Origin: Macrostomum lignano
Taxonomy: Eukaryota
Direction of reading: 5' to 3'
NCBI GenBank assembly: GCA_002269645.1
Contig: NIVC01000561.1
Location: 1-64,000 of the forward strand
Length of the DNA: 64,000 bases
A model generated the notes under the pieces. That model was not told the DNA's origin. It worked only from the letters and a program-made list of their open reading frames with translations, and made no database searches. Both the position numbers and the translations under genes were made by a program. How positions within the stretch are numbered: position 1 is the stretch's first letter; the number at the start of each line of letters is the position of its first letter. Below are positions 1 through 64,000 of this stretch, piece after piece.

Positions 1-3000
1 CCTCAGTCAGGTCGCCAGCCTTGACGCCGCGTCGCTTCAGCACGTCTTCGGCAAGCTTCAGTGCGCCAAGGGCGTCCTTGTCGAGGCCAGCCTTCTCAGC
101 GGCACTCTTGTCGAGCGGTCCCTCCGAGGCTTGACGCAAAGCGTCGCTCAGCGCGTTCTGCTCCTCGGGAGTGAGATCGGCCTTTTGCCGCTCTCCTTGG
201 CGTCATGCGTCTTTTGCATTGCCTTGGCTAGAGCGCCGTCGTCAGCAGAGGCTCGCCGTCGCTTGGCTGGCCAATAGCCTCCAAAATGTCCTTGGCCGTG
301 TCGGCGTCCACCTGTCCGCCTGACCTTTCCAGCTCGGTTAGAGCCTGTCGGCTTCTTCGGCTTTTTGCACTTTGTCGCGTCCCTCCTCGACCATCTTGGC
401 CACCTTGCCGAGCGCTTCAAGCTGCTCCGGACTGACCGTGTCGCCAGCCTTCTTGTTCTCGAGAGCGTTCAGCACAGTGAGCGCGTTGCGCGCCTCAGCG
501 TCGGATAGGCCAAGACTCTCCGGGTCCTCTTCGAGAACCTTCCTCATCGCGCTGGCGCTCTCGGTTAGACTATCAGCCTGGTCGTCGTTCAGCTTCTTGT
601 CCTTGCCGTCGCTGGCTAGCCATGAGAGTGCCTTCAGCGTATCGGCCGCATTCTCGGCGTCCTCAACTGCGGCGGCCTTCTCTGCGTCGCGCAGAGACTC
701 GGCCGACTCGCCCTCCTTTCGCTCTTGTCGGCCTTCTTCTTCTTTTTGTTCAGCAGAGCAGCGCTTTGGCCAGCTGAGCGCGGTCCTCGTCGGTCAGCTC
801 GTCCAACGGACGATCCTTGATGCGCTGCAGCGTCGCTGCTAGCATTTCTCGCTCCTCGTCACTTAGGCCGCTTGCGTCGGACCCAAGCACCTCATCGAGT
901 GCGTTCACTGCGTCGCCGACCGCTTTGCGCTCTTCCTCAGTCAGGTCGCCAGCCTTGACGCCGCGTCGCTTCAGCACGTCTTCGGCAAGCTTCAGTGCGC
1001 CAAGGGCGTCCTTGTCGAGGCCAGCCTTCTCAGCGGCACTCTTGTCGAGCGGTCCCTCCGAGGCTTGACGCAAAGCGTCGCTCAGCGCGTTCTGCTCCTC
1101 GGGAGTGAGATCGGCCTTTTGCCGCTCTCCTTGGCGTCATGCGTCTTTTGCATTGCCTTGGCTAGAGCGCCGTCGTCAGCAGACGGCTCGCCGTCGCTTG
1201 GCTGGCCAATAGCCTCCAAAATGTCTTGGCCGTGTCGGCGTCCACCTGTCCGCCTGACCTTTCCAGCTCGGTTAGAGCCTGTCGGCTTATCTTCGGCTTT
1301 TTGCACTTTGTCGCGTCCCTCCTCGACCATCTTGGCCACCTTGCCGAGCGCTTCAAGCTGCTCCGGACTGACCGTGTCGCCAGCCTTCTTGTTCTCGAGA
1401 GCGTTCAGCACAGTGAGCGCGTTGCGCGCCTCAGCGTCGGATAGGCCAAGACTCTCCGGGTCCTCTTCGAGAACCTTCCTCATCGCGCTGGCGCTCTCGG
1501 TTAGACTATCAGCCTGGTCGTCGTTCAGCTTCTTGTCCTTGCCGTCGCTGGCTAGCCATGAGAGTGCCTTCAGCGTATCGGCCGCATTCTCGGCGTCCTC
1601 AACTGCGGCGGCCTTCTCTGCGTCGCGCAGAGACTCGGCCGACTCGCCCTCCTTTCGCTGCTTGTCGGCCTTCTTCTTCTTTTTGTTCAGCAGAGCAGCG
1701 CTTTGGCCAGCTGAGCGCGGTCCTCGTCGGTCAGCTCGTCCAACGGACGATCCTTGATCCGCTGCAGCGTCGCTGCTAGCATTTCTCGCTCCTCTTCACT
1801 TAGGCCGCTTGCGTCGGACCCAAGCACCTCATCGAGTGCGTTCACTGCGTCGCCGACCGCTTTGCGCTCTTCCTCAGTCAGGTCGCCAGCCTTGACGCCG
1901 CGTCGCTTCAGCACGTCTTCGGCAAGCTTCAGTGCGCCAAGGGCGTCCTTGTCGAGGCCAGCCTTCTCAGCGGCACTCTTGTCGAGCGGTCCCTCCGAGG
2001 CTTGACGCAAAGCGTCGCTCAGCGCGTTCTGCTCCTCGGGAGTGAGATCGGCCTTGCCGCTCTCCTTGGCGTCATGCGTCTTTTGCATTGCCTTGGCTAG
2101 AGCGCCGTCGTCAGCAGATGGCTCGCCGTCGCTTGGCTGGCCAATAGCCTCCAAAATGTCCTTGGCCGTGTCGGCGTCCACCTGTCCGCCTGACCTTTCC
2201 AGCTCGGTTAGAGCCTGTCGGCTTCTTCGGCTTTTTGCACTTTGTCGCGTCCCTCCTCGACCATCTTGGCCACCTTGCCGAGCGCTTCAAGCTGCTCCGG
2301 ACTGACCGTGTCGCCAGCCTTCTTGTTCTCGAGAGCGTTCAGCACAGTGAGCGCGTTGCGCGCCTCAGCGTCGGATAGGCCAAGACTCTCCGGGTCCTCT
2401 TCGAGAACCTTCCTCATCGCGCTGGCGCTCTCGGTTAGACTATCAGCCTGGTCGTCGTTCAGCTTCTTGTCCTTGCCGTCGCTGGCTAGCCATGAGAGTG
2501 CCTTCAGCGTATCGGCCGCATTCTCGGCGTCCTCAACTGCGGCGGCCTTCTCTGCGTCGCGCAGAGACTCGGCCGACTCGCCCTCCTTTCGCTCTTGTCG
2601 GCCTTCTTCTTCTTTTTGTTCAGCATAGCCAGCGCTTTGGCCAGCTGAGCGCGGTCCTCGTCGGTCAGCTCGTCCAACGGACGATCCTTGATCCGCTGCA
2701 GCGTCGCTGCTAGCATTTCTCGCTCCTCTTCACTTAGGCCGCTTGCGTCGGACCCAAGCACCTCATCGAGTGCGTTCACTGCGTCGCCGACCGCTTTGCG
2801 CTCTTCCTCAGTCAGGTCGCCAGCCTTGACGCCGCGTCGCTTCAGCACGTCTTCGGCAAGCTTCAGTGCGCCAAGGGCGTCCTTGTCGAGGCCAGCCTTC
2901 TCAGCGGCACTCTTGTCGAGCGGTCCCTCCGAGGCTTGACGCAAAGCGTCGCTCAGCGCGTTCTGCTCCTCGGGAGTGAGATCGGCCTTTTGCCGCTCTC

Positions 3001-6000
3001 CTTGGCGTCATGCGTCTTTTGCATTGCCTTGGCTAGAGCGCCGTCGTCAGCAGACGGCTCGCCGTCGCTTGGCTGGCCAATAGCCTCCAAAATGTCCTTG
3101 GCCGTGTCGGCGTCCACCTGTCCGCCTGACCTTTCCAGCTCGGTTAGAGCCTGTCGGCTTCTTCGGCTTTTTGCACTTTGTCGCGTCCCTCCTCGACCAT
3201 CTTGGCCACCTTGCCGAGCGCTTCAAGCTGCTCCGGACTGACCGTGTCGCCAGCCTTCTTGTTCTCGAGAGCGTTCAGCACAGTGAGCGCGTTGCGCGCC
3301 TCAGCGTCGGATAGGCCAAGACTCTCCGGGTCCTCTTCGAGAACCTTCCTCATCGCGCTGGCGCTCTCGGTTAGACTATCAGCCTGGTCGTCGTTCAGCT
3401 TCTTGTCCTTGCCGTCGCTGGCTAGCCATGAGAGTGCCTTCAGCGTATCGGCCGCATTCTCGGCGTCCTCAACTGCGGCGGCCTTCTCTGCGTCGCGCAG
3501 AGACTCGGCCGACTCGCCCTCCTTTCGCTCTTGTCGGCCTTCTTCTTCTTTTTGTTCAGCATAGCAGCGCTTTGGCCAGCTGAGCGCGGTCCTCGTCGGT
3601 CAGCTCGTCCAACGGACGATCCTTGATGCGCTGCAGCGTCGCTGCTAGCATTTCTCGCTCCTCGTCACTTAGGCCGCTTGCGTCGGACCCAAGCACCTCA
3701 TCGAGTGCGTTCACTGCGTCGCCGACCGCTTTGCGCTCTTCCTCAGTCAGGTCGCCAGCCTTGACGCCGCGTCGCTTCAGCACGTCTTCGGCAAGCTTCA
3801 GTGCGCCAAGGGCGTCCTTGTCGAGGCCAGCCTTCTCAGCGGCACTCTTGTCGAGCGGTCCCTCCGAGGCTTGACGCAAAGCGTCGCTCAGCGCGTTCTG
3901 CTCCTCGGGAGTGAGATCGGCCTTTTGCCGCTCTCCTTGGCGTCATGCGTCTTTTGCATTGCCTTGGCTAGAGCGCCGTCGTCAGCAGATGGCTCGCCGT
4001 CGCTTGGCTGGCCAATAGCCTCCAAAATGTCTTTGGCCGTGTCGGCGTCCACCTGTCCGCCTGACCTTTCCAGCTCGGTTAGAGCCTGTCGGCTTCATCG
4101 GCTTTTTGCACTTTGTCGCGTCCCTCCTCGACCATCTTGGCCACCTTGCCGAGCGCTTCAAGCTGCTCCGGACTGACCGTGTCGCCAGCCTTCTTGTTCT
4201 CGAGAGCGTTCAGCACAGTGAGCGCGTTGCGCGCCTCAGCGTCGGATAGGCCAAGACTCTCCGGGTCCTCTTCGAGAACCTTCCTCATCGCGCTGGCGCT
4301 CTCGGTTAGACTATCAGCCTGGTCGTCGTTCAGCTTCTTGTCCTTGCCGTCGCTGGCTAGCCATGAGAGTGCCTTCAGCGTATCGGCCGCATTCTCGGCG
4401 TCCTCAACTGCGGCGGCCTTCTCTGCGTCGCGCAGAGACTCGGCCGACTCGCCCTCCTTTCGCTGCTTGTCGGCCTTCTTCTTCTTTTTGTTCAGCAGAG
4501 CCAGCGCTTTGGCCAGCTGAGCGCGGTCCTCGTCGGTCAGCTCGTCCAACGGACGATCCTTGATCCGCTGCAGCGTCGCTGCTAGCATTTCTCGCTCCTC
4601 TTCACTTAGGCCGCTTGCGTCGGACCCAAGCACCTCATCGAGTGCGTTCACTGCGTCGCCGACCGCTTTGCGCTCTTCCTCAGTCAGGTCGCCAGCCTTG
4701 ACGCCGCGTCGCTTCAGCACGTCTTCGGCAAGCTTCAGTGCGCCAAGGGCGTCCTTGTCGAGGCCAGCCTTCTCAGCGGCACTCTTGTCGAGCGGTCCCT
4801 CCGAGGCTTGACGCAAAGCGTCGCTCAGCGCGTTCTGCTCCTCGGGAGTGAGATCGGCCTTTTGCCGCTCTCCTTGGCGTCATGCGTCTTTTGCATTGCC
4901 TTGGCTAGAGCGCCGTCGTCAGCAGACGGCTCGCCGTCGCTTGGCTGGCCAATAGCCTCCAAAATGTCTTGGCCGTGTCGGCGTCCACCTGTCCGCCTGA
5001 CCTTTCCAGCTCGGTTAGAGCCTGTCGGCTTCTTCGGCTTTTTGCACTTTGTCGCGTCCCTCCTCGACCATCTTGGCCACCTTGCCGAGCGCTTCAAGCT
5101 GCTCCGGACTGACCGTGTCGCCAGCCTTCTTGTTCTCGAGAGCGTTCAGCACAGTGAGCGCGTTGCGCGCCTCAGCGTCGGATAGGCCAAGACTCTCCGG
5201 GTCCTCTTCGAGAACCTTCCTCATCGCGCTGGCGCTCTCGGTTAGACTATCAGCCTGGTCGTCGTTCAGCTTCTTGTCCTTGCCGTCGCTGGCTAGCCAT
5301 GAGAGTGCCTTCAGCGTATCGGCCGCATTCTCGGCGTCCTCAACTGCGGCGGCCTTCTCTGCGTCGCGCAGAGACTCGGCCGACTCGCCCTCCTTTCGCT
5401 TGTCGGCCTTCTTCTTCTTTTTGTTCAGCAGAGCCAGCGCTTTGGCCAGCTGAGCGCGGTCCTCGTCGGTCAGCTCGTCCAACGGACGATCCTTGATCCG
5501 CTGCAGCGTCGCTGCTAGCATTTCTCGCTCCTCTTCACTTAGGCCGCTTGCGTCGGACCCAAGCACCTCATCGAGTGCGTTCACTGCGTCGCCGACCGCT
5601 TTGCGCTCTTCCTCAGTCAGGTCGCCAGCCTTGACGCCGCGTCGCTTCAGCACGTCTTCGGCAAGCTTCAGTGCGCCAAGGGCGTCCTTGTCGAGGCCAG
5701 CCTTCTCAGCGGCACTCTTGTCGAGCGGTCCCTCCGAGGCTTGACGCAAAGCGTCGCTCAGCGCGTTCTGCTCCTCGGGAGTGAGATCGGCCTTTTGCCG
5801 CTCTCCTTGGCGTCATGCGTCTTTTGCATTGCCTTGGCTAGAGCGCCGTCGTCAGCAGACGGCTCGCCGTCGCTTGGCTGGCCAATAGCCTCCAAAATGT
5901 CTTGGCCGTGTCGGCGTCCACCTGTCCGCCTGACCTTTCCAGCTCGGTTAGAGCCTGTCGGCTTCATCGGCTTTTTGCACTTTGTCGCGTCCCTCCTCGA

Positions 6001-7175
6001 CCATCTTGGCCACCTTGCCGAGCGCTTCAAGCTGCTCCGGACTGACCGTGTCGCCAGCCTTCTTGTTCTCGAGAGCGTTCAGCACAGTGAGCGCGTTGCG
6101 CGCCTCAGCGTCGGATAGGCCAAGACTCTCCGGGTCCTCTTCGAGAACCTTCCTCATCGCGCTGGCGCTCTCGGTTAGACTATCAGCCTGGTCGTCGTTC
6201 AGCTTCTTGTCCTTGCCGTCGCTGGCTAGCCATGAGAGTGCCTTCAGCGTATCGGCCGCATTCTCGGCGTCCTCAACTGCGGCGGCCTTCTCTGCGTCGC
6301 GCAGAGACTCGGCCGACTCGCCCTCCTTTCGCTTCTTGTCGGCCTTCTTCTTCTTTTTGTTCAGCAGAGCTAGCGCTTTGGCCAGCTGAGCGCGGTCCTC
6401 GTCGGTCAGCTCGTCCAACGGACGATCCTTGATCCGCTGCAGCGTCGCTGCTAGCATTTCTCGCTCCTCTCACTTAGGCCGCTTGCGTCGGACCCAAGCA
6501 CCTCATCGAGTGCGTTCACTGCGTCGCCGACCGCTTTGCGCTCTTCCTCAGTCAGGTCGCCAGCCTTGACGCCGCGTCGCTTCAGCACGTCTTCGGCAAG
6601 CTTCAGTGCGCCAAGGGCGTCCTTGTCGAGGCCAGCCTTCTCAGCGGCACTCTTGTCGAGCGGTCCCTCCGAGGCTTGACGCAAAGCGTCGCTCAGCGCG
6701 TTCTGCTCCTCGGGAGTGAGATCGGCCTTTTGCCGCTCTCCTTGGCGTCATGCGTCTTTTGCATTGCCTTGGCTAGAGCGCCGTCGTCAGCAGACGGCTC
6801 GCCGTCGCTTGGCTGGCCAATAGCCTCCAAAATGTCTTGGCCGTGTCGGCGTCCACCTGTCCGCCTGACCTTTCCAGCTCGGTTAGAGCCTGTCGGCTTC
6901 TCGGCTTTTTGCACTTTGTCGCGTCCCTCCTCGACCATCTTGGCCACCTTGCCGAGCGCTTCAAGCTGCTCCGGACTGACCGTGTCGCCAGCCTTCTTGT
7001 TCTCGAGAGCGTTCAGCACAGTGAGCGCGTTGCGCGCCTCAGCGTCGGATAGGCCAATACTCTCCGGGTCCTCTTCGAGAACCTTCCTCATCGCGCTGGC
7101 GCTCTCGGTTAGACTATCAGCCTGGTCGTCGTTCAGCTTCTTGTCCTTGCCGTCGCTGGCCAGCCATGAGAGTGC
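1..7175 (-). repeat. Coding tandem array, unit ~935 bp (~312 codons), ~7.7 near-identical copies
   Basis: cctcagtcaggtcgcc recurs at 1, 935, 1872, 2806, 3741, 4678, 5611 and 6546; each copy encodes the same A/E/K/D/L-rich peptide (GPLDKSAAEKAGLDKDALGALKLAEDVL...LNKKKKKADK...LSWLASDGKDKKL...). Confidence 0.97.
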
Positions 7176-10100
7176 TATAATTGCTTCAGCTGCATTCGTT
7201 GCTTCAGTTAATATGGATTCTTTTTCTTGGATGGTTGCTTCTTCAATTTCGGTAATTTTTCCTTTGCGTCGCTTTTCTGTTTTCTTTTTTTTCTTTGTGA
7301 TGAGAGCCAAGGCGTCTCCAAGTTGTTTTCTTTCGTTTGAGTTCAGGTCGCTAATTTTTTTGTTTTGAACAGCATTTAGCGTGTCTTTTATTGTGCTTTG
7401 TTCTTGTTTATTAAGACCACTAGTTTCTATGGTAAGCACTTTTTTTGCTGCATCAATGGCGTCACTGAGTTCCTTTTCGTCTTCTGCAGATAGTTTCGCG
7501 TTTTTACTAGGCTGTTTTTGAAGAAGTTCAGCACCATCCTTGATTGTATCACGTGTATTTTCATCTAACCCAGCCTTCTCTGCAGCGCTCTTTTCAAGAG
7601 GAGCAGCTCGTGCTTTTCTTTCCAGAAATTGGCGCAACAATTTTAGTTCAGTCAACGTAAAGTTGCTGAACCTGCCTTCGGCCATACAGCCTTTTAGATT
7701 AGCCAAAATGCCTTGTAGATCACTGTTGTCGCGCTTCTTGTCGCTTTCGACAAGCGTCACAATGCACTGAGACAATTTTGCTAATCGACTGTAATCCCTC
7801 ATTGCAATGAACCTGTTAATGAACTGCAGTTCTCCGAGTAGCCAAATGCTTAGCTCAGCATTTTGAGTGTCGTGAACGTTGTCGTGAATTATATCTGCTA
7901 TTTTAGCAAGTGAGCTGATTTCCTCTTTAGAAAACCTGGCCCCCTTCTCTTTCTGTTGAAGGCCTTTCATCACTGTTAGTGCCCGTACGGTTTCTAGGCC
8001 AGTAAGGCCAAGATCTGTAGGTGACTCACGAAGTGATTTAAATAAGGAATTAAAATTTTAGAAAGGCGATTTGAGTCTTTTCCGCTGAGACTCTTACTTG
8101 GCTTTAGGTCATTTGCCAGCATTTCTTGGATATTAGTAATGGCTTTCATGGCCTTGTCATACATCGTTGTTCTTCGGTCGACTGGGTCACGGAAAGAGCG
8201 TTTCCTGTTAATGACCTGTTCGAGCATATGCGAAAGAGTCTGGTTGTCAGTTCTGTTACTAAATTCGTTGCGCCGTGCACGCCGCAATTGCTGCTTGAGT
8301 TTGCTCTGAACTGAAATGGCTAAGTTCATGCTTGCAGTGGCCCTTCTAAGATAGTCGCAGCACTCGTGCAGTACCATTTTTTCGCTATCGCCAATATTTC
8401 TAGCGGCGAGTAGGCTTTGCGTTGAGGCTATAGCTAGCTTTACTGACCTCTCATTGATTGTAATGTCATCGATCTGAACCCGATTCAACATAGCAACGCC
8501 TCTTAAAATGGCATCACTCTCTGCCATATCAATGTAGCGATCATCTTCCGCTCGGCTCATCACCATTTGAAGAGCCTCTAGAGTAGAGCTCAAATTGTGT
8601 GATCGTATGGCCCGGGAACTTTGTTCTTCACGGCCTCTACAATCGTTTTTAGTTTCGAAAAATTTCGCATATCGTCCTCCGTGGGTGTCATTGGCGTCGT
8701 ATATATTTCGCATCCTCTCTCTCTGAGAAGAACTTCAAGCTGCTGCAGAAAGTACCGGTCTTTAAACGACAATTCCGCGACGTCTGCCACACTAGGAGGT
8801 CGCGCTGAAGCGACATATTCCTTCAGTTCGCTAACCATTTCAGTAGACACTTTAGCACACTTGTCCTTCTCAGCCAGCTGCTCAACACGAGCACGGAATG
8901 CCTCAAGCTTCCGCGTTGGCATGTCGATGCGAAAATGTAGCGCGTAGTGCAACTTGCGGACCTCGTTGCGAGGCAGGAAGAGATAGTCTCGATTAGGGCT
9001 GTGAAGCTTGAACAATTCTAACAGGATGTCAGAAATACGCTGATTAGACCTCTGCATTAGCCGAGAAATTCGCACACGTTTAGCCTCCTCCAAAATCTCG
9101 ATAACACTGGTTAGGAAGCTTACTGGATCTAAGCAGTTATGCCCGACGGCGCTGCAGAGGCGGTCCAGGCAGTGGTTGTTTAATGGCGACAGGCTAATCT
9201 GATTGGAGTGATCTTTCTTTGAGAGGATGGCTAAACGACGGCTCAAATCAAGAACTGCATTGTTAACTGCAACTTCACCGTCTGGTGTCTCGCAGGCTTC
9301 TAAGCAGACGCGCAGTTCCCGTAGAATTTGCGCCACATCGATACCAAGTCGTTCGTCCAGTTCAATTACTTGATTTGCAACGGAGTCGTGAAGGCTCACC
9401 GCCAACTCTGTCAGAGTACCGACAAGCGGGTCAGTACCACCGCCAACAGCGCCCTCTGGTGCAGCCTTTTCGGCCTCTAAAAATGCCTCTGCTGCGGTGA
9501 GGTGCTCTGGTAGTTCGCTGTTTGGCTGCAGTCCAGCTTCCAAAGCGAGTCGTGTCATCTGAACTAAATTGTTCAACATATTTTGGAGATCAGTGTCCGG
9601 TGGGGGCTCCTCAGCCATCAGGGCAAAGTCGCGCAACTCATACAGCTGCTGGCGTAGGGCACCCAAATGACGCGAAGTGTAAGTTGGCTGGGGCGGAGTG
9701 CCGATGTTTAGATCATAGGTGTCTAGAACACCTTCTGGAGGAGGTCCTCCCACAATAGCTGTCTGAAGGGGTCTCTGCTGGCGAGCAGAGCTGATTGCCG
9801 AATCATTTAGCGAGTTACTCGGTTCTCGGGCAGGTTTGGCTAGATCGTGGTTGATCTTCCTCAGTAAGACGTCCGCCATGTATTCCTTACCGAATGTGTC
9901 GCTTCCAGGAAAACGCACTATGTCCCATATGTTAGAACGTTCTTCATCTGTGAGCTCAACAAGCCGCAAAACAGTAGCCAAAAGCTCCGAGATATCAAAC
10001 TCCATAAGGTGGCGACGGACATCGTCCGAGTGAACTGTCAATAGCTGCTCGCGTAGATCTTCTTTTGAGCAAGATGCCGCGGCCACCGGGCTCAGCACTG

Positions 10101-11703
10101 GTGGTTCGACGATTACAATGTTTGGTAGTGCCGCTTCTTCTTTGACCTCTACTATGTCTTCTTTAGGTTCGTTATCCGATCTTGTAGCTTCGACAACTGC
10201 TAGTCTGGGCATTCTTAGGAATCTAAATTGTTCGCCGAGGTCGTACGCTTTGCCAAGCTCGCACTGAGGCAGCTCAGCATCAAGACAGAAGCCTTTCTCT
10301 GTCAAGCGATGTCGGCCGTCTTTTGATGCATCAACTACTATTTCAGATCGCAGGGTTCGCATGTTTTGATCGACTACATCCAGTGTTGTGCAAGTGATTG
10401 ATGGGCCTAATGTCACCTTGTGCATAGCTCGATTCGCAGCCTTACGAGTTACTTTTTTCTGGCCCAGAGGACGTACCGAGTGTATGAGCTGAAACTTCGG
10501 CGCGCCGTCGTCACCGTCACCGGTAGTTAAATTTTCACTTGCCTTTGACTCTAAAGTTGGTAGAATTACCGGAAGGTTTGATTCTGGGGTATGAATTGCG
10601 TTTGCATCGGAAGATATTGGTGGCGACTTCGGTGGAGAAGGCGAAGCTGGTTTAGCAAACGAAGTCTGAAGCAAAGTTGCTGTGAGACTCATCTCGGGTG
10701 ATGCTTTGCCCGAATCGCCAGATTTCTCAGTGTTGATGATCTCTGTTGCTTCCGCTAGATAGCTGTATTGATAGGTGCGTGTTTCCTGAGGACGGCTCTG
10801 GCGCTTGCGTTGCTGCTCAGCGGCCGCTATTTCTAACTCGTCTGGCGGCGGTTCGTCCACAATTATCAGTGCTTCTTCGCTACGTCGAAGACGCTGACGC
10901 TCTTGCATCTGCCTCCGACGTTCGCGCACTTCCTCCATGCGCAAATCTTGATGCGAGCTTGTTGTAGCCGGCCTGTGTAATTGGAGTTGATTCCGGCCGA
11001 AGCTACTCATTTCCGGATGCTCGCTAAGCGCATGGTGCACCTTTGCAACTAAATCAGCGATGGAACTGCCACGTGAGGCTATAGTAGCGGCGGCAGAACC
11101 GCGACGAATAGGTGTTGTGGACGTGGTGGTAGACGTTTCAACGACCGGCGTCACTTTAGGTCGCGGCCGCTGACTGGGCAAGTTTTCAAGAATCACGCTG
11201 ATGCGTTGATGCCTCTCAGCCACTGTGCCATGGCCAAGTCGAGGCGCACTAGCGTAGCGAGCTCGATATGACTGCTCGATGTTGCCGGTGTGTGGCTCCG
11301 CCGCGCCCCTCGGGAAAGTTAGTCGGGGTTCCGGCACTTCATATCCGCTAGACGAACCACCGGAAGATCGCGCGGCTGACCTAGCAGACGGGGGCGCCTG
11401 CTCCGACGCCGGGTGGACGGCGTTTCCCGGCCAGGCCGCCTGCTTGGCCTCGTAGAACTTGGCCTTGGCCTCAGCCAGAGTCGGCATAGATGTGGTTAGC
11501 TCGATTGGCGACACGCAGGCATCCCGTCGCTCCGGTTGCTGCTGCTGTTGGGGCAGCGGCGGTGCAGAATCAAACACCGAACTGGCGGCCGACCAGCGCA
11601 TCTGGCTGTCTCGGCTTTGTCTGCTATCGACATTGCCGGATCTCTCCCTGCTTCTCGCTGAGGATGACGATGAAGACGATTCACTCGAGTGTCGCCGTCG
11701 TGC

Positions 11704-11734
<31 letters not shown>

Positions 11735-11918
11735 TGCTCCTGCGGCGGCTGCTCCGAAGCCGGACGTTTTGGTCGCAACTTTACCGACAGAGGCCGCTGG
11801 TGCTGGCCAGCTTCGGTTGACGAGGTCGACGATGACCCCGGATCGCGGCGTGGGCGCATGCGAGCTGGCGGCTGCTGCGGTTGCATCTCCGCCGCTGCCG
11901 ATGGGCTCTGGCTGTCGC
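1..11918 (-). CDS. Giant unknown protein (~3,900+ aa in window, 3'-truncated): low-complexity N-terminal part, helical middle, then ~312-aa tandem repeats
   Basis: Collinear minus-strand ORFs 8590-11958, 7994-8713, 6693-7973 and the repeat fragments join up: acceptor tttacag|GC at 11918; one apparent 1-nt frameshift near 8600; an 83-nt GTAAGA...CCTACAG intron at 8097-8015 joins ...LKP to NLGLTGLETVRALTVMKG in frame; then repeats to the window edge. No family recognised. Confidence 0.7.
8015..8097 (-). other. 83-nt phase-1 intron in the giant repeat gene
   Basis: AAG CCA A|gtaagag...AT-rich...cacctacag|AT CTT GGC; removal fuses ORF 7994-8713 with ORF 6693-7973 in frame. Confidence 0.75.
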
Positions 11919-14900
11919 CTGTAAACATTTTTTTAAATTGGCTATTTTTTATGTACATTTTTCTGAGGACATAAAAGTTACCTTTTTTGATACAAAACCA
12001 GTTACGGAAACAGCCTAAAATCTAAAATTAATTACGCACTTTAGAGCTACTGATGTAAACATTTGTCTGTGTATTTACCGCATGCACAGGCAAACTAGTT
12101 GTGCTAGTCAGCTCAGTAGAGTAAGAGTTAATGCCTAAACGCACGGAACTCCAGCTGAATGAGCACGGAATACGAGGGAGACAGATGGAAAAGAAAACAA
12201 GATAAAGACCGCCTGCTTTTTGAACTCTTCTGTCCCGATAGCAAACAACCGCCTCCTTTCCAAGCAAAAACTGAACTTGAGGAAAAGGTACCCGACAAAT
12301 TTTTATACCCAAGCGAATGGTTCTTTAGCAAACATATGCCTACTAGACGTACGCTAGTTGGTTAAGCTTAAGCCAAGGACTACAACTAACTAATGGTCAG
12401 GGCATGACTGCTTGCCTTCTCGATAGCTGCAAGTTTTGATTGCATGTCGCCTTGATTCGCGGCAGCGCCCGAAGCCCCCATTCCTCTGGCAATTTAACCG
12501 ACTAAATGGCATCATAGGCAAGAAATACCTGCGAGTTTACCTCGTCGGCCGCCACCTTGAAGGAACAGGTCAGTCAAGGCTACCGCCACGGCCGGTATCA
12601 GGGGCCGCACACTGCGGCTAGCAAGTTTGGCAAAACGACCAGCAGATCCGCTAGACATGCCTGCCACAATCAGCGGCTCCACAAGCTGGTTGCCATCTGT
12701 CAGTCTCACAGTCGTATTTTACTTACAGGCGAGATTCAATCGGAAAGAAAAGATAAAAAGCAACGGCAGATGTAAAGAAACTCGAGGCGAAGGCACGAAC
12801 TGATTAAATATACGGCGACAGTGAAGAATGGGCAGGTAGTCACTCAAGCTCTCCTCTGTCACCCGCTCTCGCACTCTTCTTTCGCGTGTCAATATGTTGC
12901 AATTTTTTCTGGTCTTCTTCTTTTGCCTATACAAGCCTGCCCGTATAAAAAACCCACTGGCCTTTCGCCGAACGTGACCAGTGATAAATAGAATATGGCT
13001 TGGCCTAATTATAGCCACGGAGAAAATGCAGCAGGAGTGTTAGTGCAACACAAATCGCATGCAACGAATGTTGAGTCTCCAAAACTTCTTTGGTTGGGCT
13101 GTAAAACTGTAGAGAAAACTGAGCACTGTTGGATGAGTACACAAGAGCATACAGATAGGTGTCAGATTACTAACTCCGACTTAAGAGTGCATTTCAGAAC
13201 AGAACTTAGCCTGTTGAAGATATTAAGCGACTGATAAAGACTGTAATGCAAGCCACAATGCAAAGTCACTTAAGTCTACTAATGCTCAAGCTAGACTTTT
13301 TGACCAAGAAGATGCTGAGTTAATAGACGGTATGGATAATAAATAAAATGATCAGGCATGACCCAACCATAGCTTGAGAACTGCTTGAGAAGTTTTAGCA
13401 TCAAGGAGAGCAAGTCCTTATCGAATATCATTTTATTTAGGTGAAAGAACCCAATCGATGAAGGAACCATTTGAAGTGTTAATTTGTTAAAATCCTCTTA
13501 ATTCATTAATTCATCTAGAGAATTCATAGTGGTTCTATCTGAGTGAACAAAACAAAACTCAATGATTATTTACTTGCTTGACAGAGCTAACAAGCCCTGT
13601 TTAAGGGAAGTAAAAATGTGTGCTTAATCTACTTACGGATCAAATTTTCATCATTTCCGCGGCAGCAGCAACAGCAACGACAGCAGATCCGTTTCCGTTG
13701 CTTCTGTTTTTGTTTAAATCTTTGTTTAGTAGCTCTTGCTAACATGGACTGAAGGATTTGGATAGCCGATAGCGGAATGGACACCAAACTGCACTGGATT
13801 TCGCTTCTAACTTTGCTTGTCAATCGGCTTTGTTTAGCCAATAAGAATTGAGATTCTCATGCATAATGCATCGACAATCAAGCCCCTCGCACTTGTCTGC
13901 TTGCTATCCAATTGAAAGGAAATGCTTCGCTGTTCAAACTGCGCCAAATACTGGTTGCCAAGGAAACCAAAAAAAACACTACACACACACTAAGATTCGG
14001 AGAAACTAAGCACACGGAAAGTTTGCTTTTTTACTTGCTAGAGCAGCGTAAATGCGAGGTTCGGCTCACTAATAATGCATACCTCTGTATAGTATTTTTG
14101 CGCTTGATTTAAAAAAAAATAAACATCGGGTGGGTATTTAGCCAGCGCCCGCGGAAAATTTCTAAGGACCTTAGGGATAAGACAATAACTAAAGAGCCTT
14201 GGAATGACTGAAATAACTGAGATTCAGAAGCTTTGATCTGAATGGCTCAAACCACGATATCCCAAGGTTTCTGGAGACCTCTTTGCAAGAAACTCAACTC
14301 AATGTTATTTACTTACGAGTACTGCAATCTTCAGTAACGTGACGAAAAACGGCTTGAAATTATAGGCAAAAAGTTGCAGTTACATGTAACAACTGGCCGT
14401 TAAAAGATCCACTTGCATGTAGAAACGGGCCGTAGAATTTATAGCCAAGTGCCTTAAGGGCATGGATGGCGCTGTTCTCATTTTATAGCTGTGTAGCCGA
14501 ATTGAGACCACATGCAGAGCTTGAGACCGTATGTACACACTTACTGAAGGAGGGGAGTGCTGGAGACTATGGATGCAGCCTTTTGAAAAATACACCCCCC
14601 TCCCCTGAATTCAACTGAGGCAGCACACAGCAGAGAAATGCACACAAGACAATGGTGAGAGTGAGAGAAATGCGCTGTCGAGATGAGACTCAAAAGGCAT
14701 AAGCTCGAAATTCACACATTGTTCTCCATTCCTGTGCTTAGATTTTTTGCTTTGAAAATACAACTGGTGCCTCCGATTGGTGTAAACAATCAATGACTCA
14801 CTTTAATAAAACGAAATTATAGTATTTGCACAATTTGCGATAGCTTAAAATCAAATAATTTGAAAACCAATATTTTTTGTTATAAGGGAAATTTCGATTA

Positions 14901-15754: not shown

Positions 15755-39432
<23,678 letters not shown>

Positions 39433-53870: not shown

Positions 53871-55629
53871 ATGCGTTGGCTTCCGCCTGCCGCCGCCGTT
53901 GCCACAGCGGCAGCCTCCGGGGTGTACCTCTCGTCGCCTTCGGATCCGAAGTCACCTCAGATGAAGCTGTTGCCAAGGTCAGAGCGGGCCGACAACTCGG
54001 AGGCGCTCACTGCGCTTCGTCGCCGGTGTCTCACCTCGCTGACAATACGTCGCGAAGAGGCCGCAGCTCCCGGCATGTCGCTGTGCGTGTCGCTTGGAGG
54101 TCGGAGACTCCTGAGCGGTGGCGTCGGTTTTGCTGACGTTGAGAACCTGATACCGTGTAATGAGCGCAGCGTTCTGCGAGTGGCCAGCATTAGTAAGTGC
54201 TTCACCGCTGTGCTGGCCGCTCAGATGATGGAGGCTGGGCAGATGGATTTCGACAAACCCGTTGGCGAGTACCTGACGGAGCCGGAGATGAAGGTTAGCA
54301 GCCAATCAGATCTCTAGTTGGAGTTCAGAATGATAGCGGAGGGTGGGTGCTGTTTATTAGCCAATCAGATCTCTAGCTAGAGTTCAGAATGATAGCGGAG
54401 GGTGGGTGTTGTTTATTAGCCAATCAGATCTCTAGCTAGAGTTCAGAATGATAGCGGAGGGCGGGTGCTGTTTATCAGCCAATCAGAGAGCTCTAGGAAG
54501 GTTCAGGAATGACAACGCAGTAATTCGCTCTCAATCAAGCAATAATTCTGGGTGAACTTGCAGAAATTCAGCCGCATGACAGTGCGCCAGCTCCTCAGTC
54601 ACACGGCCGGAGTTCGTTCTTATCACCGCACGGATTCTGACGAACTGGAGAATCCCGAGTACTACATAACTAAGTACTATGCTAGTGCAACTGAAGCCAC
54701 TAAGGAGTTGCTGTGCAACGATAAGGAAGCAATCGCCTCTGAGCCGCCGGGAAGCCAGTTTCTGTACAGCACGCACGGTTACACGCTTTTAGGAGCAGTT
54801 TTGGAACGGCTTAGCGGAGACCAGCCGATTGATAGTCTGCTCAAGAAGCTGTTTGTTCAAATGGGCCTCTCCTCTGGCACTGTGCCGGAGCAGCACGCGC
54901 CTATTATACGCAATAGAGCTCGGCAATATCAGCGGAGTAAAAACTCTCCCAGTACACTAAATAATGCGGCCTATATTGACAATAGCTATAAGTACTCTGG
55001 TGGTGGCGTGCTGTCCTGCGCTGAGGATCTGGTGGCTTTCGGTGAATTAATGATGCGCTGCGCCAATGGCGAGGACTGTAACGGTGAGGAGGAATTATAG
55101 TTAAGATTAGACTGCAAAGAGCTAATACTGGCGTGATTATTCTGACCAATCATGATTCTTGACTAGCGAAGAGTGGGGTGGGTGGGTGTTATTATTCTGA
55201 CCATTTAGGAGTCTTGACTAGCAAGTAGTGGTGTGCATATGGTTATATTCGCTTATCAGGATGCTATTTTATCTCCTCTATTTCTTAGGCATTCTAAAGC
55301 CGGACACAATTAAAATGTTGTGGAGCGCGGTGCCAGGCACAAAAGTAAACTGGGGCGTCGCATTCACGGGTCCCTACTGCCTGGGATTCGGCACAGCCAA
55401 CTACAGAGGCGAGCAGATTGTACTGCACACCGGGGCAAGCATTGGCGGTACTAGCATCCTGCTGATGGTACCGCGTATCGGCGCCGTGATTGCCGTGATC
55501 TGCAATCTGCAGCGCGTGAGTCTTACGGGCTTGGCAGTCTCAATTCTGGACGCTGTTTTTGACTATGTTCAGGAGACTGCCGCGTGTGCCGAACCGTCTA
55601 CGGAGGTATCGGCTTTCGCGAGATTTTAA
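53871..55629 (+). CDS. LACTB: Serine beta-lactamase-like protein LACTB (3 exons)
   Basis: Exons 53871-54293, 54564-55083 and 55289-55629, phase-consistent; PBP/beta-lactamase motifs SISK (SxxK), YST (LACTB variant of YxN) and HTG; also RQLLSHTAGVRSY, YKYSGGG and an Ala/Arg/Ser-rich presequence-like N-terminus. Confidence 0.93.
54296..54490. repeat. 59-bp unit x3 in LACTB intron 1
   Basis: ccaatcagatctctag recurs at 54302, 54361 and 54420. Confidence 0.9.
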
Positions 55630-56384: not shown

Positions 56385-56443
<59 letters not shown>

Positions 56444-57720
56444 GGACACTAAGGCAGAGCGACAGACAGACAGACAAGACACTAAGGCAGAGCGACAGAC
56501 AAACAGACAGACAGACACTAAGGCAGATAGACAATAAGACAGACAGACACTAAGGCTGATAGACACTAAAACAGACAGACAGACACTAAGACAGACAGAC
56601 ACTAAGGCAGATAGACACTAAGACAGACAGAAACTAAGACAGACAGACACTAAGGCAGATAGACACTAAGACAGACAGACAGACACTAAGACAGACAGAC
56701 ACTAAGGCAGATAGACAATAAGACAGACAGACACTAAGACAGACAGACAATAAGACAGATAGACACTAAGGCAGATAGACACTAAGACAGACAGACAGAC
56801 ACTAAGACAGACAGACACTAAGGCAGATAGACACTAAGGCTGATAGACACTAAGACAGACAGACACTAAGGCTGATAGACACTAAGACAGACAGACACTA
56901 AGGCTGATAGACACTAAGACAGACAGACACTAAGGCAGATAGACACTAAGACAGACAGACACTCTAAGGCTGATAGACACTAAGACAGACAGACACTAAG
57001 GCAGATAGACACTAAGGCAGACAGACACTAAGGCTGATAGACACTAAGACAGACAGACACTAAGGCTGATAGACACTAAGACAGACAGACACTAAGGCAG
57101 ATAGACACTAAGACAGACAGACACTCTAAGGCTGATAGACACTAAGACAGACAGACACTAAGGCAGATAGACACTAAGGCAGACAGACACTAAGGCTGAT
57201 AGACACTAAGACAGACAGACACTAAGGTAGATAGACACTAAGGTAGACAGACACTAAGGCTGATAGACACTAAGACAGACAGACAATAAGACAGATAGAC
57301 ACTAAGGCAGATAGACACTAAGACAGACAGACAGACACTAAGACAGACAGACACTAAGGCAGATAGACAATAAGACAGACAGACACTAAGGCAGATAGAC
57401 ACTAAGGCTGATAGACACTAAGACAGACAGACACTAAGGCTGATAGACACTAAGACAGACAGACACTAAGGCTGATAGACACTAAGACAGACAGACACTA
57501 AGGCAGATAGACACTAAGACAGACAGACACTAAGGCTGATAGACACTAAGACAGACAGACACTAAGGCAGATAGACACTAAGGCAGACAGACACTAAGGC
57601 TGATAGACACTAAGACAGACAGACACTAAGGCAGATAGACACTAAGGTAGACAGACACTAAGGCTGATAGACACTAAGACAGACAGACACTAAGGCAGAT
57701 AGACACTAAGACAGACAAAT
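56385..57720. repeat. Compound satellite built from (AGAC)n and agacactaag/ggc[a/t]gat units
   Basis: Direct reading. Confidence 0.95.
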
Positions 57721-63317: not shown

Positions 63318-64000
63318 TTATGCGTGACAACCGCCATAGCCGGAGTCTTTGTTGCACAGCCGGTTCTGGCAGCCGCGGTAGTCGGAGAAAGACGAGGCCG
63401 CCGAGGCGATTCGAGACGTTGACGCGATCGACTCCAGCTCTTCGAGTGAGGCGCAAGAAGACGGCGGTGGAGGCGGTGGCATCGGCTGAGTCTGAGTCGC
63501 CACCTCTTGAGTGACAGCAGCCTCCTCCCGCTGAAGGAAGGGATGATGCAGCATCTGCTGGAGGCTGGGCCGCTTGGCCGGATCGGCCTGCAGGCAGGCA
63601 TTGATCAGGTCCCGGCACTCTGGGCTGAGCTTCCGCTTGAACAAAGGCGTACAGTCGCAGATCTGGTCGTCCCGTTCGAATGGTACATCGCCGCAGACCA
63701 TATCGAATAGCAGGATGCCCAGCGACCAGACCTCGGCCTGCTTGCCGTTGTATCGCCGGTGCTGGATCCACTCTGGCGGGCTGTACACCCTGGTGCCATT
63801 GAAGTCCACGTAGTCAGCTTCTCGAAGCAGAGCGCCGGAGCCGAAGTCGATCAGGCGGAGAGTGCCGTCGGCCAGGTTGACGAGCAAATTCTCGTCCTTG
63901 ATGTCACGGTGCAGCACGCCAGCTTCGTGGCATTCGGTCAGAGTGTGCAGCAACTGCCGCATCAGGTCCTTGGCCTCGGTTTCATCCAGGTATCGCTTAG
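63318..64000 (-). CDS. Pim: Pim-family Ser/Thr kinase, C-terminal part (5' end outside the window)
   Basis: HRDIKDENLL, LIDFGSGA, GTRVYSPPEWI, VWSLGILLFDMVCGDVPF; frame open to the window edge (KRYLDETEAKDLMRQ). Confidence 0.93.
   Translation of the reverse strand, partial: KRYLDETEAKDLMRQLLHTLTECHEAGVLHRDIKDENLLVNLADGTLRLIDFGSGALLREADYVDFNGTRVYSPPEWIQHRRYNGKQAEVWSLGILLFDMVCGDVPFERDDQICDCTPLFKRKLSPECRDLINACLQADPAKRPSLQQMLHHPFLQREEAAVTQEVATQTQPMPPPPPPSSCASLEELESIASTSRIASAASSFSDYRGCQNRLCNKDSGYGGCHA

What the first reader, a model, noticed from the sequence alone, without database searches (positions are those of the whole stretch)
1..11918. Giant orphan protein with at least 7.7 near-identical ~312-aa repeats
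About 11.8 kb of almost intron-free coding sequence, in a locus where other genes are cut into exons of 30-200 nt. A Q/S/P/R-rich disordered N-terminus and a helical middle lead into a long-period tandem repeat that runs off the window. The unit is A/E/K/D/L-rich with a KKKKK patch and a single Trp, and I recognise no domain. It is a candidate giant fibrous or scaffold protein of an undescribed family; the function is inference.
Basis: partly seen in the sequence, partly recalled or inferred. Interest (0 to 1): 0.8.

Follow-up and report, generated by a model that had tools for sequence, protein, structure and literature searches.

The report
Giant tandem-repeat protein gene, Macrostomum flatworm
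The region is the 5' 12 kb of one very large flatworm (Macrostomum lignano-type) gene whose middle is a tandem array of almost identical 313-residue all-helical modules from a protein family with no described relatives; the many frame breaks in the array look like sequencing-consensus errors rather than biology.

Summary
The repeat is real. On the minus strand, about 7.65 near-identical units of 933-937 nt (window 7175 to 1) follow a divergent first unit, an older degenerate partial unit and a 1122-codon unique ORF (ATG at 11958). No unit is an intact ORF. Reading one protein needs about 30 single-base frame corrections.

An independent Macrostomum lignano assembly (NIVC01000762.1) carries the same unit in frame (924 nt), in ORFs up to 1285 codons. 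Its transcriptome-derived GenBank protein has 2.3 units plus a 644-aa tail. Against that unit, 23 of the window's 24 frameshifts are 1-nt deletions, and every longer indel is a multiple of three. So they are most likely consensus errors.

A second, distant relative (47% aa identity) has an in-frame 915-nt tandem unit.

There is no Pfam, PDB-sequence or Foldseek match, no signal peptide and no TM segment. The unit is all-alpha and has net charge -23.

Best reading: a lineage-restricted, intracellular, modular helical scaffold protein of at least 4,600 aa under concerted evolution (GC3 0.73 in the array against 0.33-0.51 in the flanks). The function is inference.

The gene already exists in GenBank as an uncharacterised partial model, so interest is moderate.

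The parts
8593..11958 (-). Unique 5' ORF ('ORF A'), 1122 codons from ATG 11958 to the codon before TGA 8590-8592. Residues 1-560 are S/A/Q/R/P-rich low complexity including a polyQ run. Residues 560-1122 are L/E/A-rich and predicted helical.
   Evidence: ORF list and translation; composition, no signal peptide or TM segment; no Pfam family; PDB sequence search gave only E=0.03 noise; AF2 of residues 600-1122 is helical but mean pLDDT is 43. The frame is open upstream to 12000, so an upstream exon is not excluded (sequence).
8588..8602 (-). Frame junction 1. ORF A ends ...KVPGPYDHTI* and the next frame continues ...HNLSSTLEALQMV. A single missing base in 'cacacaatttgagc' would join them.
   Evidence: Sequence and three-frame translation. 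No GT-AG intron of at least 20 nt and the right length class fits inside the frame overlap. The shift has the same direction (-1) as the array's deletions.
8040..8587 (-). Unique helical linker read in the second frame (about 182 codons, no stop, GC3 0.47).
   Evidence: No Pfam hit above noise.
8028..8057 (-). Frame junction 2, in the A/T-rich stretch 'aaaattttaattccttatttaaatcac'. The second frame stops at 7997 and the third frame is open from 8057.
   Evidence: No fitting intron. The third-frame product is homologous to the repeat unit from 'LNSLFKSLRESPTD' onward, so coding continues across the junction.
7662..8045 (-). Pre-array segment containing an old, degenerate partial unit. Window about 8051-7854 aligns to unit columns 188-264.
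   Evidence: hhalign of the unit profile A1 against this segment: E=6e-6, 35% identity over 77 columns; tblastn HSP 8051-7854.
7176..7661 (-). Divergent 5' part of the first full unit (FTLTELK... to ...AIIA). It is in frame, 37% aa and 49% nt identical to canonical units, with GC3 about 0.27-0.33.
   Evidence: Alignments; coordinates; 110 of 148 third positions differ against 68 first and 50 second positions, pN 0.42 against pS 0.83.
1..7175 (-). Homogenised array of 7.65 units of 933-937 nt (true unit inferred to be 939 nt / 313 aa), running off the window. In the 'ADLTPEE' phase, units start at 6726, 5791, 4858, 3921, 2986, 2052, 1115 and 181 (the last is partial). GC 0.62, GC3 0.73.
   Evidence: Repeat families; unit alignment with 16 variable columns, 10 of them involving indels; tblastn frame map; 24 frameshifting 1-nt indels (23 deletions) against the in-frame L005 unit, with multi-nt indels of 15, 3 and 3 nt; GC3.

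Best explanation
Window 11958 to 1 (minus strand) is the 5' part of one very large, essentially single-exon, protein-coding gene of Macrostomum lignano or a very close relative.

Architecture:
- a disordered S/Q/P/R-rich N-terminus;
- a unique helical region;
- an old degenerate partial unit;
- a half-divergent first unit;
- an array of at least 7.65 almost identical 313-aa acidic, all-alpha modules;
- outside the window, by analogy with the Mlig_3_7 copy, a last truncated unit and a disordered tail of about 640 aa. The total is at least about 4,600 aa.

The array is kept homogeneous by unequal exchange or gene conversion (concerted evolution), which has also driven its GC3 up.

The roughly 30 single-base frame breaks are deletion-biased long-read consensus errors that short-read polishing could not fix inside a repeat. 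They are not real mutations.

Function is inferred, not shown. The protein is likely an intracellular modular rod or scaffold, since it has no signal peptide or TM segment. Its length would be set by module copy number. Each module would be a helical bundle plus a long charged helix carrying the KKKKK..KQRK patch, and the disordered termini would be the interaction or regulatory ends.
For: Shown:
- The exhaustive HMMER search finds P0004, encoded on NIVC01000762.1 of GCA_002269645.1. The accession series NIVC belongs to M. lignano Mlig_3_7.
- That contig starts inside the same array. It has 7.2 units of 923/924 nt, ORFs up to 1285 codons, and a consensus that differs from the window's by 1 substitution, one 15-nt indel and the 1-nt gaps.
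- The GenBank annotation of Mlig_3_7 was derived from an RNA-seq-guided transcriptome (PMC5730564). The model with 2.3 units plus tail therefore implies transcription.
- Of the 24 frameshifts in the window's seven near-identical units, 23 are 1-nt deletions. All longer indels are 15, 3 and 3 nt. There are only 1-4 substitutions per unit.
- Indels sit on the same columns as inter-unit SNVs.
- The two assemblies break frame at different positions, so each repairs the other.
- About 6.8 kb of unique stop-free coding sequence in the window shows no frameshift.
- L006/P0005 has a 915-nt unit, in frame, with a 117-nt exact terminal repeat, 47% aa identity and pN 0.37 against pS 0.75. It confirms the frame of every unit segment.
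- Divergent first unit: third-position excess, pN 0.42 against pS 0.83.
- GC3 is 0.73 in the array against 0.33-0.51 in the flanks.
- AF2 of the unit is all-alpha, pLDDT 72.6 overall and 83-90 for residues 150-260.
- No signal peptide or TM segment; net charge -23 per unit.
Against: - No reads, cDNA or peptides for this locus were available, so the error interpretation is inference.
- Two frame breaks lie in unique sequence (about 8590 and about 8040), where repeat-specific polishing failure is a weaker excuse. ORF A (3.4 kb) has none, so the breaks are not uniformly distributed.
- Two deletions (columns 593 and 765) are present in almost all units. This needs a systematic, context-dependent error.
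- The physical link from ORF A to the array is supported only by adjacency, same-direction frame overlap and homology of the third-frame product to the unit.
- The window copy differs from the Mlig_3_7 copy by a 15-nt indel in every unit, so it may be a duplicate locus with its own fate.
- The functional statement has no direct support. The Foldseek matches to vinculin, alpha-catenin and spectrin bundles are all non-significant (E of 0.39 or worse).
Confidence: 0.6

Rival explanations
1. The window holds a decaying duplicate (pseudogene copy) of the gene. The single-base deletions are real, two of them spread through the array by homogenisation, and this copy makes at most a truncated product ending at TGA 8590.
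For: The M. lignano DV1 genome has 180 Mb of duplicated blocks at 95% identity or more (PMC5730564). Every window unit differs from the Mlig_3_7 units by a 15-nt indel, so the two are distinct copies or alleles. Two frame breaks lie in unique sequence, while the 3.4-kb ORF A is clean. Deletions at columns 593 and 765 are shared by nearly all units.
Against: The consensus-level difference from the in-frame copy is 1 substitution against four 1-nt deletions, and 23 of 24 frameshifts are 1-nt deletions. That is an indel excess and size spectrum unlike natural decay and typical of long-read consensus error. Indels coincide with SNV columns. All multi-nucleotide indels preserve frame. The other assembly has its own, different 1-nt deletion, at column 666 in 4 of 6 units.
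Confidence: 0.17
2. Same gene, different mode of action. It is a polyprotein precursor, like profilaggrin or nematode polyprotein antigens, that is cut at the basic KKKKK..KQRK patch to release many copies of an all-helical monomer of about 313 aa.
For: Near-identical units lie in one giant exon, flanked by partial or divergent units. A conserved basic patch sits once per unit in an otherwise acidic module and is retained in the distant relative as KKEKK.
Against: There is no signal peptide, so furin-type processing is unlikely. There is no RxK/RR consensus site. AF2 places the patch inside a continuous helix of 62 residues rather than a linker. There is no Pfam match to S100/EF-hand or NPA families.
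Confidence: 0.1
3. Two separate genes. ORF A is a complete 1122-aa protein ending at TGA 8590, and the array belongs to a second transcription unit that starts downstream.
For: A genuine in-frame TGA at 8590-8592. M. lignano trans-splices 39% of its transcripts, and polycistron-like units exist (PMC5730564).
Against: The next frame is already open 140 nt upstream of the TGA and continues the same helix-cap motif pattern. There is no intergenic spacer. The only ATG-initiated ORF (8713) starts inside ORF A's coding sequence. The shift is the same -1 type as the array's deletions.
Confidence: 0.08
4. A non-coding 0.94-kb satellite that only mimics coding sequence.
For: The window is full of tandem repeats, and no unit has an intact ORF.
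Against: Unit lengths of 924 and 915 nt are in frame in two independent sequences. There is protein-level conservation with saturated synonymous sites, and an annotated transcript-derived protein exists.
Confidence: 0.02

Closest known systems
Hypothetical protein of Macrostomum lignano on NIVC01000762.1 (P0004, 1320 aa; Mlig_3_7 annotation)
   Same: It has the same repeat unit. The consensus differs by one substitution apart from indels. It has the same phase and the same motifs (AEKAGLD, LSWLASDG, KKKKK), and it supplies the 3' end of the gene: a last truncated unit, a 644-aa tail and two small terminal exons.
   Different: Its unit is 308 aa and lacks 'AEKAA'. The model is 5'-truncated at an internal Met just after an assembly indel, and its contig starts inside the array. 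It carries no name or function.
P0005 / MEE4247509.1, labelled 'Kangiellaceae bacterium' MAG (JGI 3300040801 contig, 1032 nt)
   Same: It is homologous over the whole unit (41-47% identity). It is tandem and in frame (915 nt = 305 aa), and the AEKAGLD, LSWLASDG, PEQL.ALG and KMVE.GR motifs are conserved.
   Different: It comes from a different organism of unknown identity. Only 1.1 units are known, and GC3 is 0.46. The bacterial label rests on binning of a 1-kb contig and is probably wrong. That last point is inference.
Profilaggrin and other S100-fused-type proteins (from my own knowledge, not tested by homology)
   Same: Architecture: 10-12 nearly identical units of about 324 aa in one giant exon, partial or divergent units at the array edges, copy-number variation and concerted evolution.
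   Different: There is no S100/EF-hand head. The composition is unrelated (acidic and helical here, against His/Ser/Gly/Arg-rich and disordered). There is no sequence similarity, and processing into monomers is not shown here.
Spectrin, plakin, vinculin and alpha-catenin-type helical-bundle rods
   Same: All-alpha modules strung in tandem in a large intracellular protein. These folds are the top, though non-significant, Foldseek neighbours.
   Different: There is no Pfam Spectrin or other hit. Foldseek E is 0.39 or worse and TM 0.25 or lower over the full length. The module is about 313 aa rather than 106, and the units are more than 99% identical rather than anciently diverged.
Nematode polyprotein allergens/antigens (ABA-1 type; from my own knowledge)
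   Same: Tandem, near-identical, helix-rich units encoded head to tail, with a basic site once per unit.
   Different: Those are secreted, have units of about 130 aa cut at tetrabasic furin sites, and bind lipid. Here there is no signal peptide, no such site and no Pfam match.

Membership tests
Protein-coding long-period tandem array under concerted evolution (generic kind) | Unit length is a multiple of three and the frame is open across units | tested here: inconclusive
   Met in the Mlig_3_7 copy (924-nt units, ORFs of 656 and 1285 codons) and in L006 (915 nt). In the window itself units are 933-937 nt with 2-5 frameshifts each, so the feature is met only after correction to 939 nt.
Protein-coding long-period tandem array under concerted evolution (generic kind) | Within-species units are near-identical, edge units and orthologous units are diverged, and there is purifying selection on the protein | tested here: met
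   More than 99% identity among 7 units. Edge unit 37% aa identical, with third-position excess. Between-species identity 47% aa, pN 0.37 against pS 0.75.
Spectrin-repeat proteins (Pfam PF00435) | Three-helix repeats of about 106 aa detectable by the Pfam profile or by fold | tested here: not met
   No Spectrin hit for the unit, the unique parts or P0004, even at E up to 1 or 0.1. Foldseek hits to spectrin or alpha-actinin rods have E 0.57-1.6 and TM 0.2 or lower.
S100-fused-type proteins (filaggrin family) | N-terminal S100/EF-hand domain | tested here: not met
   Pfam scan of the 1122-aa N-terminal ORF returned no family.
S100-fused-type proteins (filaggrin family) | Proteolytic release of monomer units | not testable with these tools
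   Needs protein biochemistry.
Nematode polyprotein allergens | Signal peptide, tetrabasic cleavage site between units, NPA profile match | tested here: not met
   No hydrophobic N-terminus (maximum 10-aa hydropathy -0.37). No Pfam NPA hit. The basic patch is KKKKKADKQRK, not RxK/RR (sequence).
LEA group 3 / hydrophilic stress proteins | 11-mer amphipathic repeats, Pfam LEA profiles | tested here: not met
   No LEA family among Pfam hits at E up to 1. The internal periodicity found is about 55-115 aa, not 11.
DUF5053 (PF16476) | A domain-level match above the gathering score | tested here: not met
   The single unit scores 12 bits against a cutoff of 26.6. P0004 reaches 32.6 bits only by summing repeated sub-threshold stretches, and no stretch passes on its own.

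The most novel reading that the evidence does not exclude
The 305-313-aa module is a new all-alpha fold family restricted to macrostomid-type flatworms. It forms a length-tunable intracellular rod, and module copy number, kept homogeneous by GC-biased conversion, varies between individuals, lines or duplicated chromosomes and tunes a cellular structure. A still more exotic reading is that the 'Kangiellaceae' relative is genuinely bacterial, which would imply horizontal transfer of a repeat module. I give that reading 5% or less.
Probability: 0.3. Interest if true: 0.55.

Novelty: new member of a known kind. Interest (0 to 1): 0.4.

Why it matters
- **A tractable model.** If the gene is intact, it is among the larger proteins of a flatworm in which transgenesis and RNAi work. 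It is built from a module with no known relatives, which makes it a convenient case for studying how long coding repeats are homogenised. The sharp conversion boundary and the GC3 jump from about 0.3 to 0.73 bear directly on that question.
- **A caution for annotation.** Both available assemblies break the frame inside the array at different places, and the GenBank model is truncated by one such break. The public proteome therefore shows only a 1320-aa fragment of a protein of more than 4,600 aa.
- **A caution for metagenomics.** A relative sits in GenBank under a bacterial MAG name.
- **What it does not do.** It opens no long-standing question by itself.

Tried and rejected
- **Word-indexed homology searches** with the unit and with ORF A returned nothing. 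These negatives are unreliable. The orphan status of ORF A therefore rests only on Pfam and PDB.
- **Exact look-ups** of window ORFs in the contig index found no record.
- **Organism identification through the beta-lactamase-like neighbour** gave only 35-42% identical hits from unlabelled assemblies.
- **Rfam** on the whole window gave no family.
- **Short GT-AG introns as an explanation for the two unique-region frame changes:** none fits. The tempting GTGAGT at about 8026 gives either a 15-nt non-shifting 'intron' or removes sequence that is homologous to the unit.
- **Reading 'KPTGSNRAGKVRRTGGRRHGQ'.** This is the only reading that keeps an ORF in two units. It was rejected because both P0004 and P0005 support 'SRQALTELERSGGQVDADTAK'.
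- **AF2 of the unique helical region** was too poor to search with (pLDDT 43).
- **Foldseek of the unit model** gave nothing significant.
- **Metagenome scans** by profile and by DNA pattern produced only chance matches.
- **Internal sub-repeats.** A recurring 'L-S/T-x-E-E...L..AL' helix-cap motif and weak self-alignments (E about 4e-4 at offsets of about 81-113 aa). Window-16 scores do not exceed shuffles. These are suggestive only.
- **Plus-strand ORFs inside the array** (up to 230 codons, S/A/L-rich) are treated as antisense by-products of a GC3-rich gene.
Full report
**1. What is in the sequence**

The feature is on the minus strand. A 1122-codon ORF starts at ATG 11958 and stops at TGA 8590-8592. 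Two further stop-free stretches follow, each overlapping the previous one in a different frame: 8734-7997 and 8057-6696.

From about 7479 down to position 1 there is a direct tandem repeat with spacing of 933-937 nt, eight units in all. TRF missed it only because its period limit is 500. Seven units differ from their consensus at 3-5 columns each. The eighth, nearest the unique sequence, is a hybrid: its first third is about 45-50% identical and the rest near-identical.

- The unit is A 17%, L 12%, E 12%, D 11% and K 11%. It has one Trp, no Cys, Phe or Tyr, net charge -23 and a KKKKK patch.
- The first 330 residues of the N-terminal ORF are S/A/Q/R/P-rich.

**2. The frame problem**

No unit is an intact ORF. 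The longest stop-free stretch in the array is 266 codons, and even the 936-nt majority consensus needs three same-direction frame changes. Among the seven near-identical units only 16 alignment columns vary. Ten of those involve indels, and the indels sit on or next to the columns that also carry substitutions.

**3. Evidence from elsewhere**

The two word-indexed searches were empty. An exhaustive HMMER search of 1.84 billion representatives with window 8057-6696 found exactly two proteins.

*P0004 (1320 aa).*
- It is encoded on NIVC01000762.1 of GCA_002269645.1. The NIVC accession series is the Macrostomum lignano Mlig_3_7 assembly (PMC5730564).
- That contig begins inside the same array, with 7.2 units of 923 or 924 nt. 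The 924-nt units are fully in frame (308 aa), and ORFs reach 656 and 1285 codons. The 923-nt units lack one base in a TTTTGG context.
- The protein model holds 2.3 units, a last unit truncated after ...AEKAGLDKDAL, and a 644-aa S/A/R/P-rich tail. It ends in two small exons after introns of about 1.3 kb and about 85 nt.
- According to the paper, the GenBank annotation of this assembly was taken from an RNA-seq-guided transcriptome. The model is therefore indirect evidence of transcription across array units.

The consensus units of the two sources differ by one substitution, one 15-nt indel (the window has an extra 'AEKAA') and the single-base gaps. The window is therefore M. lignano or something extremely close. 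It is probably another copy or allele in a genome known to carry large duplicated blocks.

*P0005 (343 aa).*
- It is labelled a Kangiellaceae MAG protein. It lies on a 1032-nt metagenome contig made of a 915-nt unit plus an exact 117-nt terminal repeat. That is a collapsed, in-frame tandem array of 305-aa units.
- It aligns with the M. lignano unit over its whole length at 47% identity. pN is 0.37 against a saturated pS of 0.75, and motifs such as AEKAGLD, LSWLASDG, PEQL.ALG and KMVE.GR are invariant.
- It settles which frame is real in the one ambiguous segment: ...KAEDSRQALTELERSGGQVDADTAKDIL..., not the 'KPTGSNRAGKVRR' reading that happens to stay open in two window units.

**4. Are the window's frameshifts real?**

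Measured against the in-frame Mlig_3_7 unit, the seven near-identical window units carry:
- 24 frameshifting indels, of which 23 are 1-nt deletions and 1 is a 1-nt insertion, at seven recurrent columns;
- longer indels of 15, 3 and 3 nt only, all multiples of three;
- only 1-4 substitutions per unit.

The homogenised part of the first unit adds four more 1-nt deletions. The two unique-region junctions are also -1 shifts, and neither can be explained by a short GT-AG intron.

Five features are what deletion-biased long-read consensus in an unpolishable repeat produces, and not what neutral decay produces:
- the excess of single-base deletions over substitutions;
- their coincidence with true inter-unit variant columns;
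- frame preservation by every longer indel;
- each assembly being intact exactly where the other is broken;
- the absence of any frameshift in about 6.8 kb of other stop-free coding sequence in the window (ORF A, a 683-codon ORF and the beta-lactamase-like exons).

I therefore take the true unit here to be 939 nt / 313 aa. There are reservations. Two breaks lie in unique sequence, and two deletions are shared by nearly all units. A genuinely decayed duplicate copy therefore keeps about 17% of my belief.

**5. Evolutionary anatomy**

Upstream of the array, the third-frame product 8051-7854 is a degenerate copy of unit columns 188-264 (hhalign E 6e-6). The divergent part of the first unit (7661-7176) is 37% aa and 49% nt identical to the canonical unit, and differences pile up at third positions: 110 against 68 at first and 50 at second positions. 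Here pN is 0.42 and pS 0.83. Identity then jumps to about 100% at ...AL|SWLASDG.

GC3 is 0.73 in the homogenised units of both assemblies. It is 0.33-0.39 in the adjacent divergent units and 0.46-0.59 in the unique N- and C-terminal parts. This is a textbook picture of an old repeat whose centre is being homogenised. The GC3 rise fits GC-biased gene conversion, which is inference. The C-terminal half of ORF A shows no detectable relation to the unit.

**6. What the protein looks like**

- Pfam finds nothing at curated level for the unit, the unique parts or P0005. P0004's DUF5053 score is a sum of repeated 12-bit stretches, none of which passes alone.
- PDB sequence searches are empty or noise.
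- AF2 on a single corrected unit gives an all-alpha model with 11 helices, including one of 62 residues that carries the basic patch. Mean pLDDT is 72.6 (83-90 for residues 150-260) and pTM is 0.42.
- Foldseek against the PDB has no hit better than E 0.39. The weak neighbours are generic helical bundles such as vinculin, alpha-catenin and spectrin.
- There is a recurring helix-cap-like motif (G/D-L-S/T-x-E-E...L..AL) and weak internal self-similarity at offsets of about 55, 81 and 113 residues (E 4e-4 to 4e-3). Simple window scores do not beat shuffles.
- There is no signal peptide or TM segment in the N-terminus or in P0004.
- The unique helical region folds poorly in silico (pLDDT 43).

**7. 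Most likely mechanism**

The anatomy is shown. The function is inferred. The protein is likely a very large intracellular modular protein of at least about 4,600 aa if the tail resembles P0004's. Acidic helical modules would form an extended rod or scaffold whose length depends on copy number. The disordered S/R/P/Q-rich ends and the once-per-module basic patch would be interaction sites.

Rivals are a polyprotein cut at the basic patch, a decayed duplicate, two separate genes, and a non-coding satellite, which is effectively excluded. Each is listed with its evidence and refutation test in the rival explanations.

**8. Comparison and novelty**

By homology, the only relatives are an unnamed, 5'-truncated GenBank model from the same species and one mislabelled metagenome fragment.

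By architecture, it works like filaggrin-type giant-exon arrays and like helical-repeat rods, but it fails the defining tests of each family: S100 head, Spectrin profile, NPA features and LEA profile. It is therefore a new, undescribed family of a well-known kind of gene, and it is already partly present in public data.

A specialist would find it neat rather than startling. The most useful by-products are the demonstration that both assemblies corrupt the array and the clean concerted-evolution and GC3 signal.

Noticed in passing
tool behaviour: The word-indexed homology search returned 'no hit' for the repeat unit, although a GenBank protein with nearly identical units exists. Negative results from that tool for biased sequences should not be read as orphan status.
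   Followed up: yes
L006 1-1032 (JGI 3300040801 Ga0450804_0071181; NCBI MEE4247509.1): A relative of the unit is deposited as a protein of a 'Kangiellaceae bacterium' MAG. The contig is just one 915-nt unit plus a 117-nt exact terminal repeat, with GC 0.50. It is most likely eukaryotic (flatworm-like) DNA mis-binned into a bacterial MAG. Its true source organism is unknown.
   Followed up: partly
window 1-8057 and L005 4669-8391: GC3 is 0.73 in the homogenised units but 0.33-0.39 in the adjacent divergent units and 0.46-0.59 in the unique parts of the same gene. The switch occurs within a few tens of bases at about 7175. This suggests GC-biased gene conversion tied to array homogenisation.
   Followed up: partly
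L005 1-6670 (NIVC01000762.1): The Mlig_3_7 contig starts inside the array, so it is an assembly break. Its first unit is error-rich, and 4 of its 6 complete units lack one base at TTTTGG. The annotated CDS starts at an internal Met right after such a gap. The public protein model is therefore a truncated fragment.
   Followed up: yes
window 12000-64000: At least 25 separate micro- and minisatellite arrays lie here, with periods of 4-60 nt and lengths up to 1.3 kb. Examples are 16280-17174 (TTCTG)n, 22074-23093, 26416-27365, 29039-30204, 31142-32078 and 56387-57717. They generate many spurious long ORFs. This fits the reported 15% simple and tandem repeat content of M. lignano.
   Followed up: partly
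window 17197-19248 (-): A neighbouring 683-codon ORF on the same strand as the giant gene. It is E/R/Q/S/A-rich with a coiled-coil-like N-terminus. It has no Pfam family and no exact record in the contig index. It may be another lineage-specific low-complexity protein.
   Followed up: partly
window 53871-55629 (+): A beta-lactamase-fold (LACTB-like) gene in at least three stop-free exon stretches. Two of them match PF00144. The best homologues found are only 35-42% identical. A 59-nt minisatellite (54300-54487) sits in its first intron.
   Followed up: partly
window 63321-63962 (-): The C-lobe of a Ser/Thr protein kinase (PF00069, E 2e-39, profile positions 104-263). From memory it looks PIM-like. 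The N-lobe would lie beyond the window end.
   Followed up: partly
window 372-7368 (+): Recurrent plus-strand ORFs of 100-230 codons (S/A/L/F-rich) run antisense to every unit. I take them as by-products of a GC3-rich sense frame. I looked for no independent evidence of coding.
   Followed up: no
window 11960-12790 (-): Upstream of ATG 11958 there are acceptor-like sites (...tcctcag|aaaaATG and ...gtttacag|GCG) and a GTAAGT donor-like site near 12728. A non-coding or short 5' exon, or a trans-splice acceptor, may precede the annotated start.
   Followed up: no
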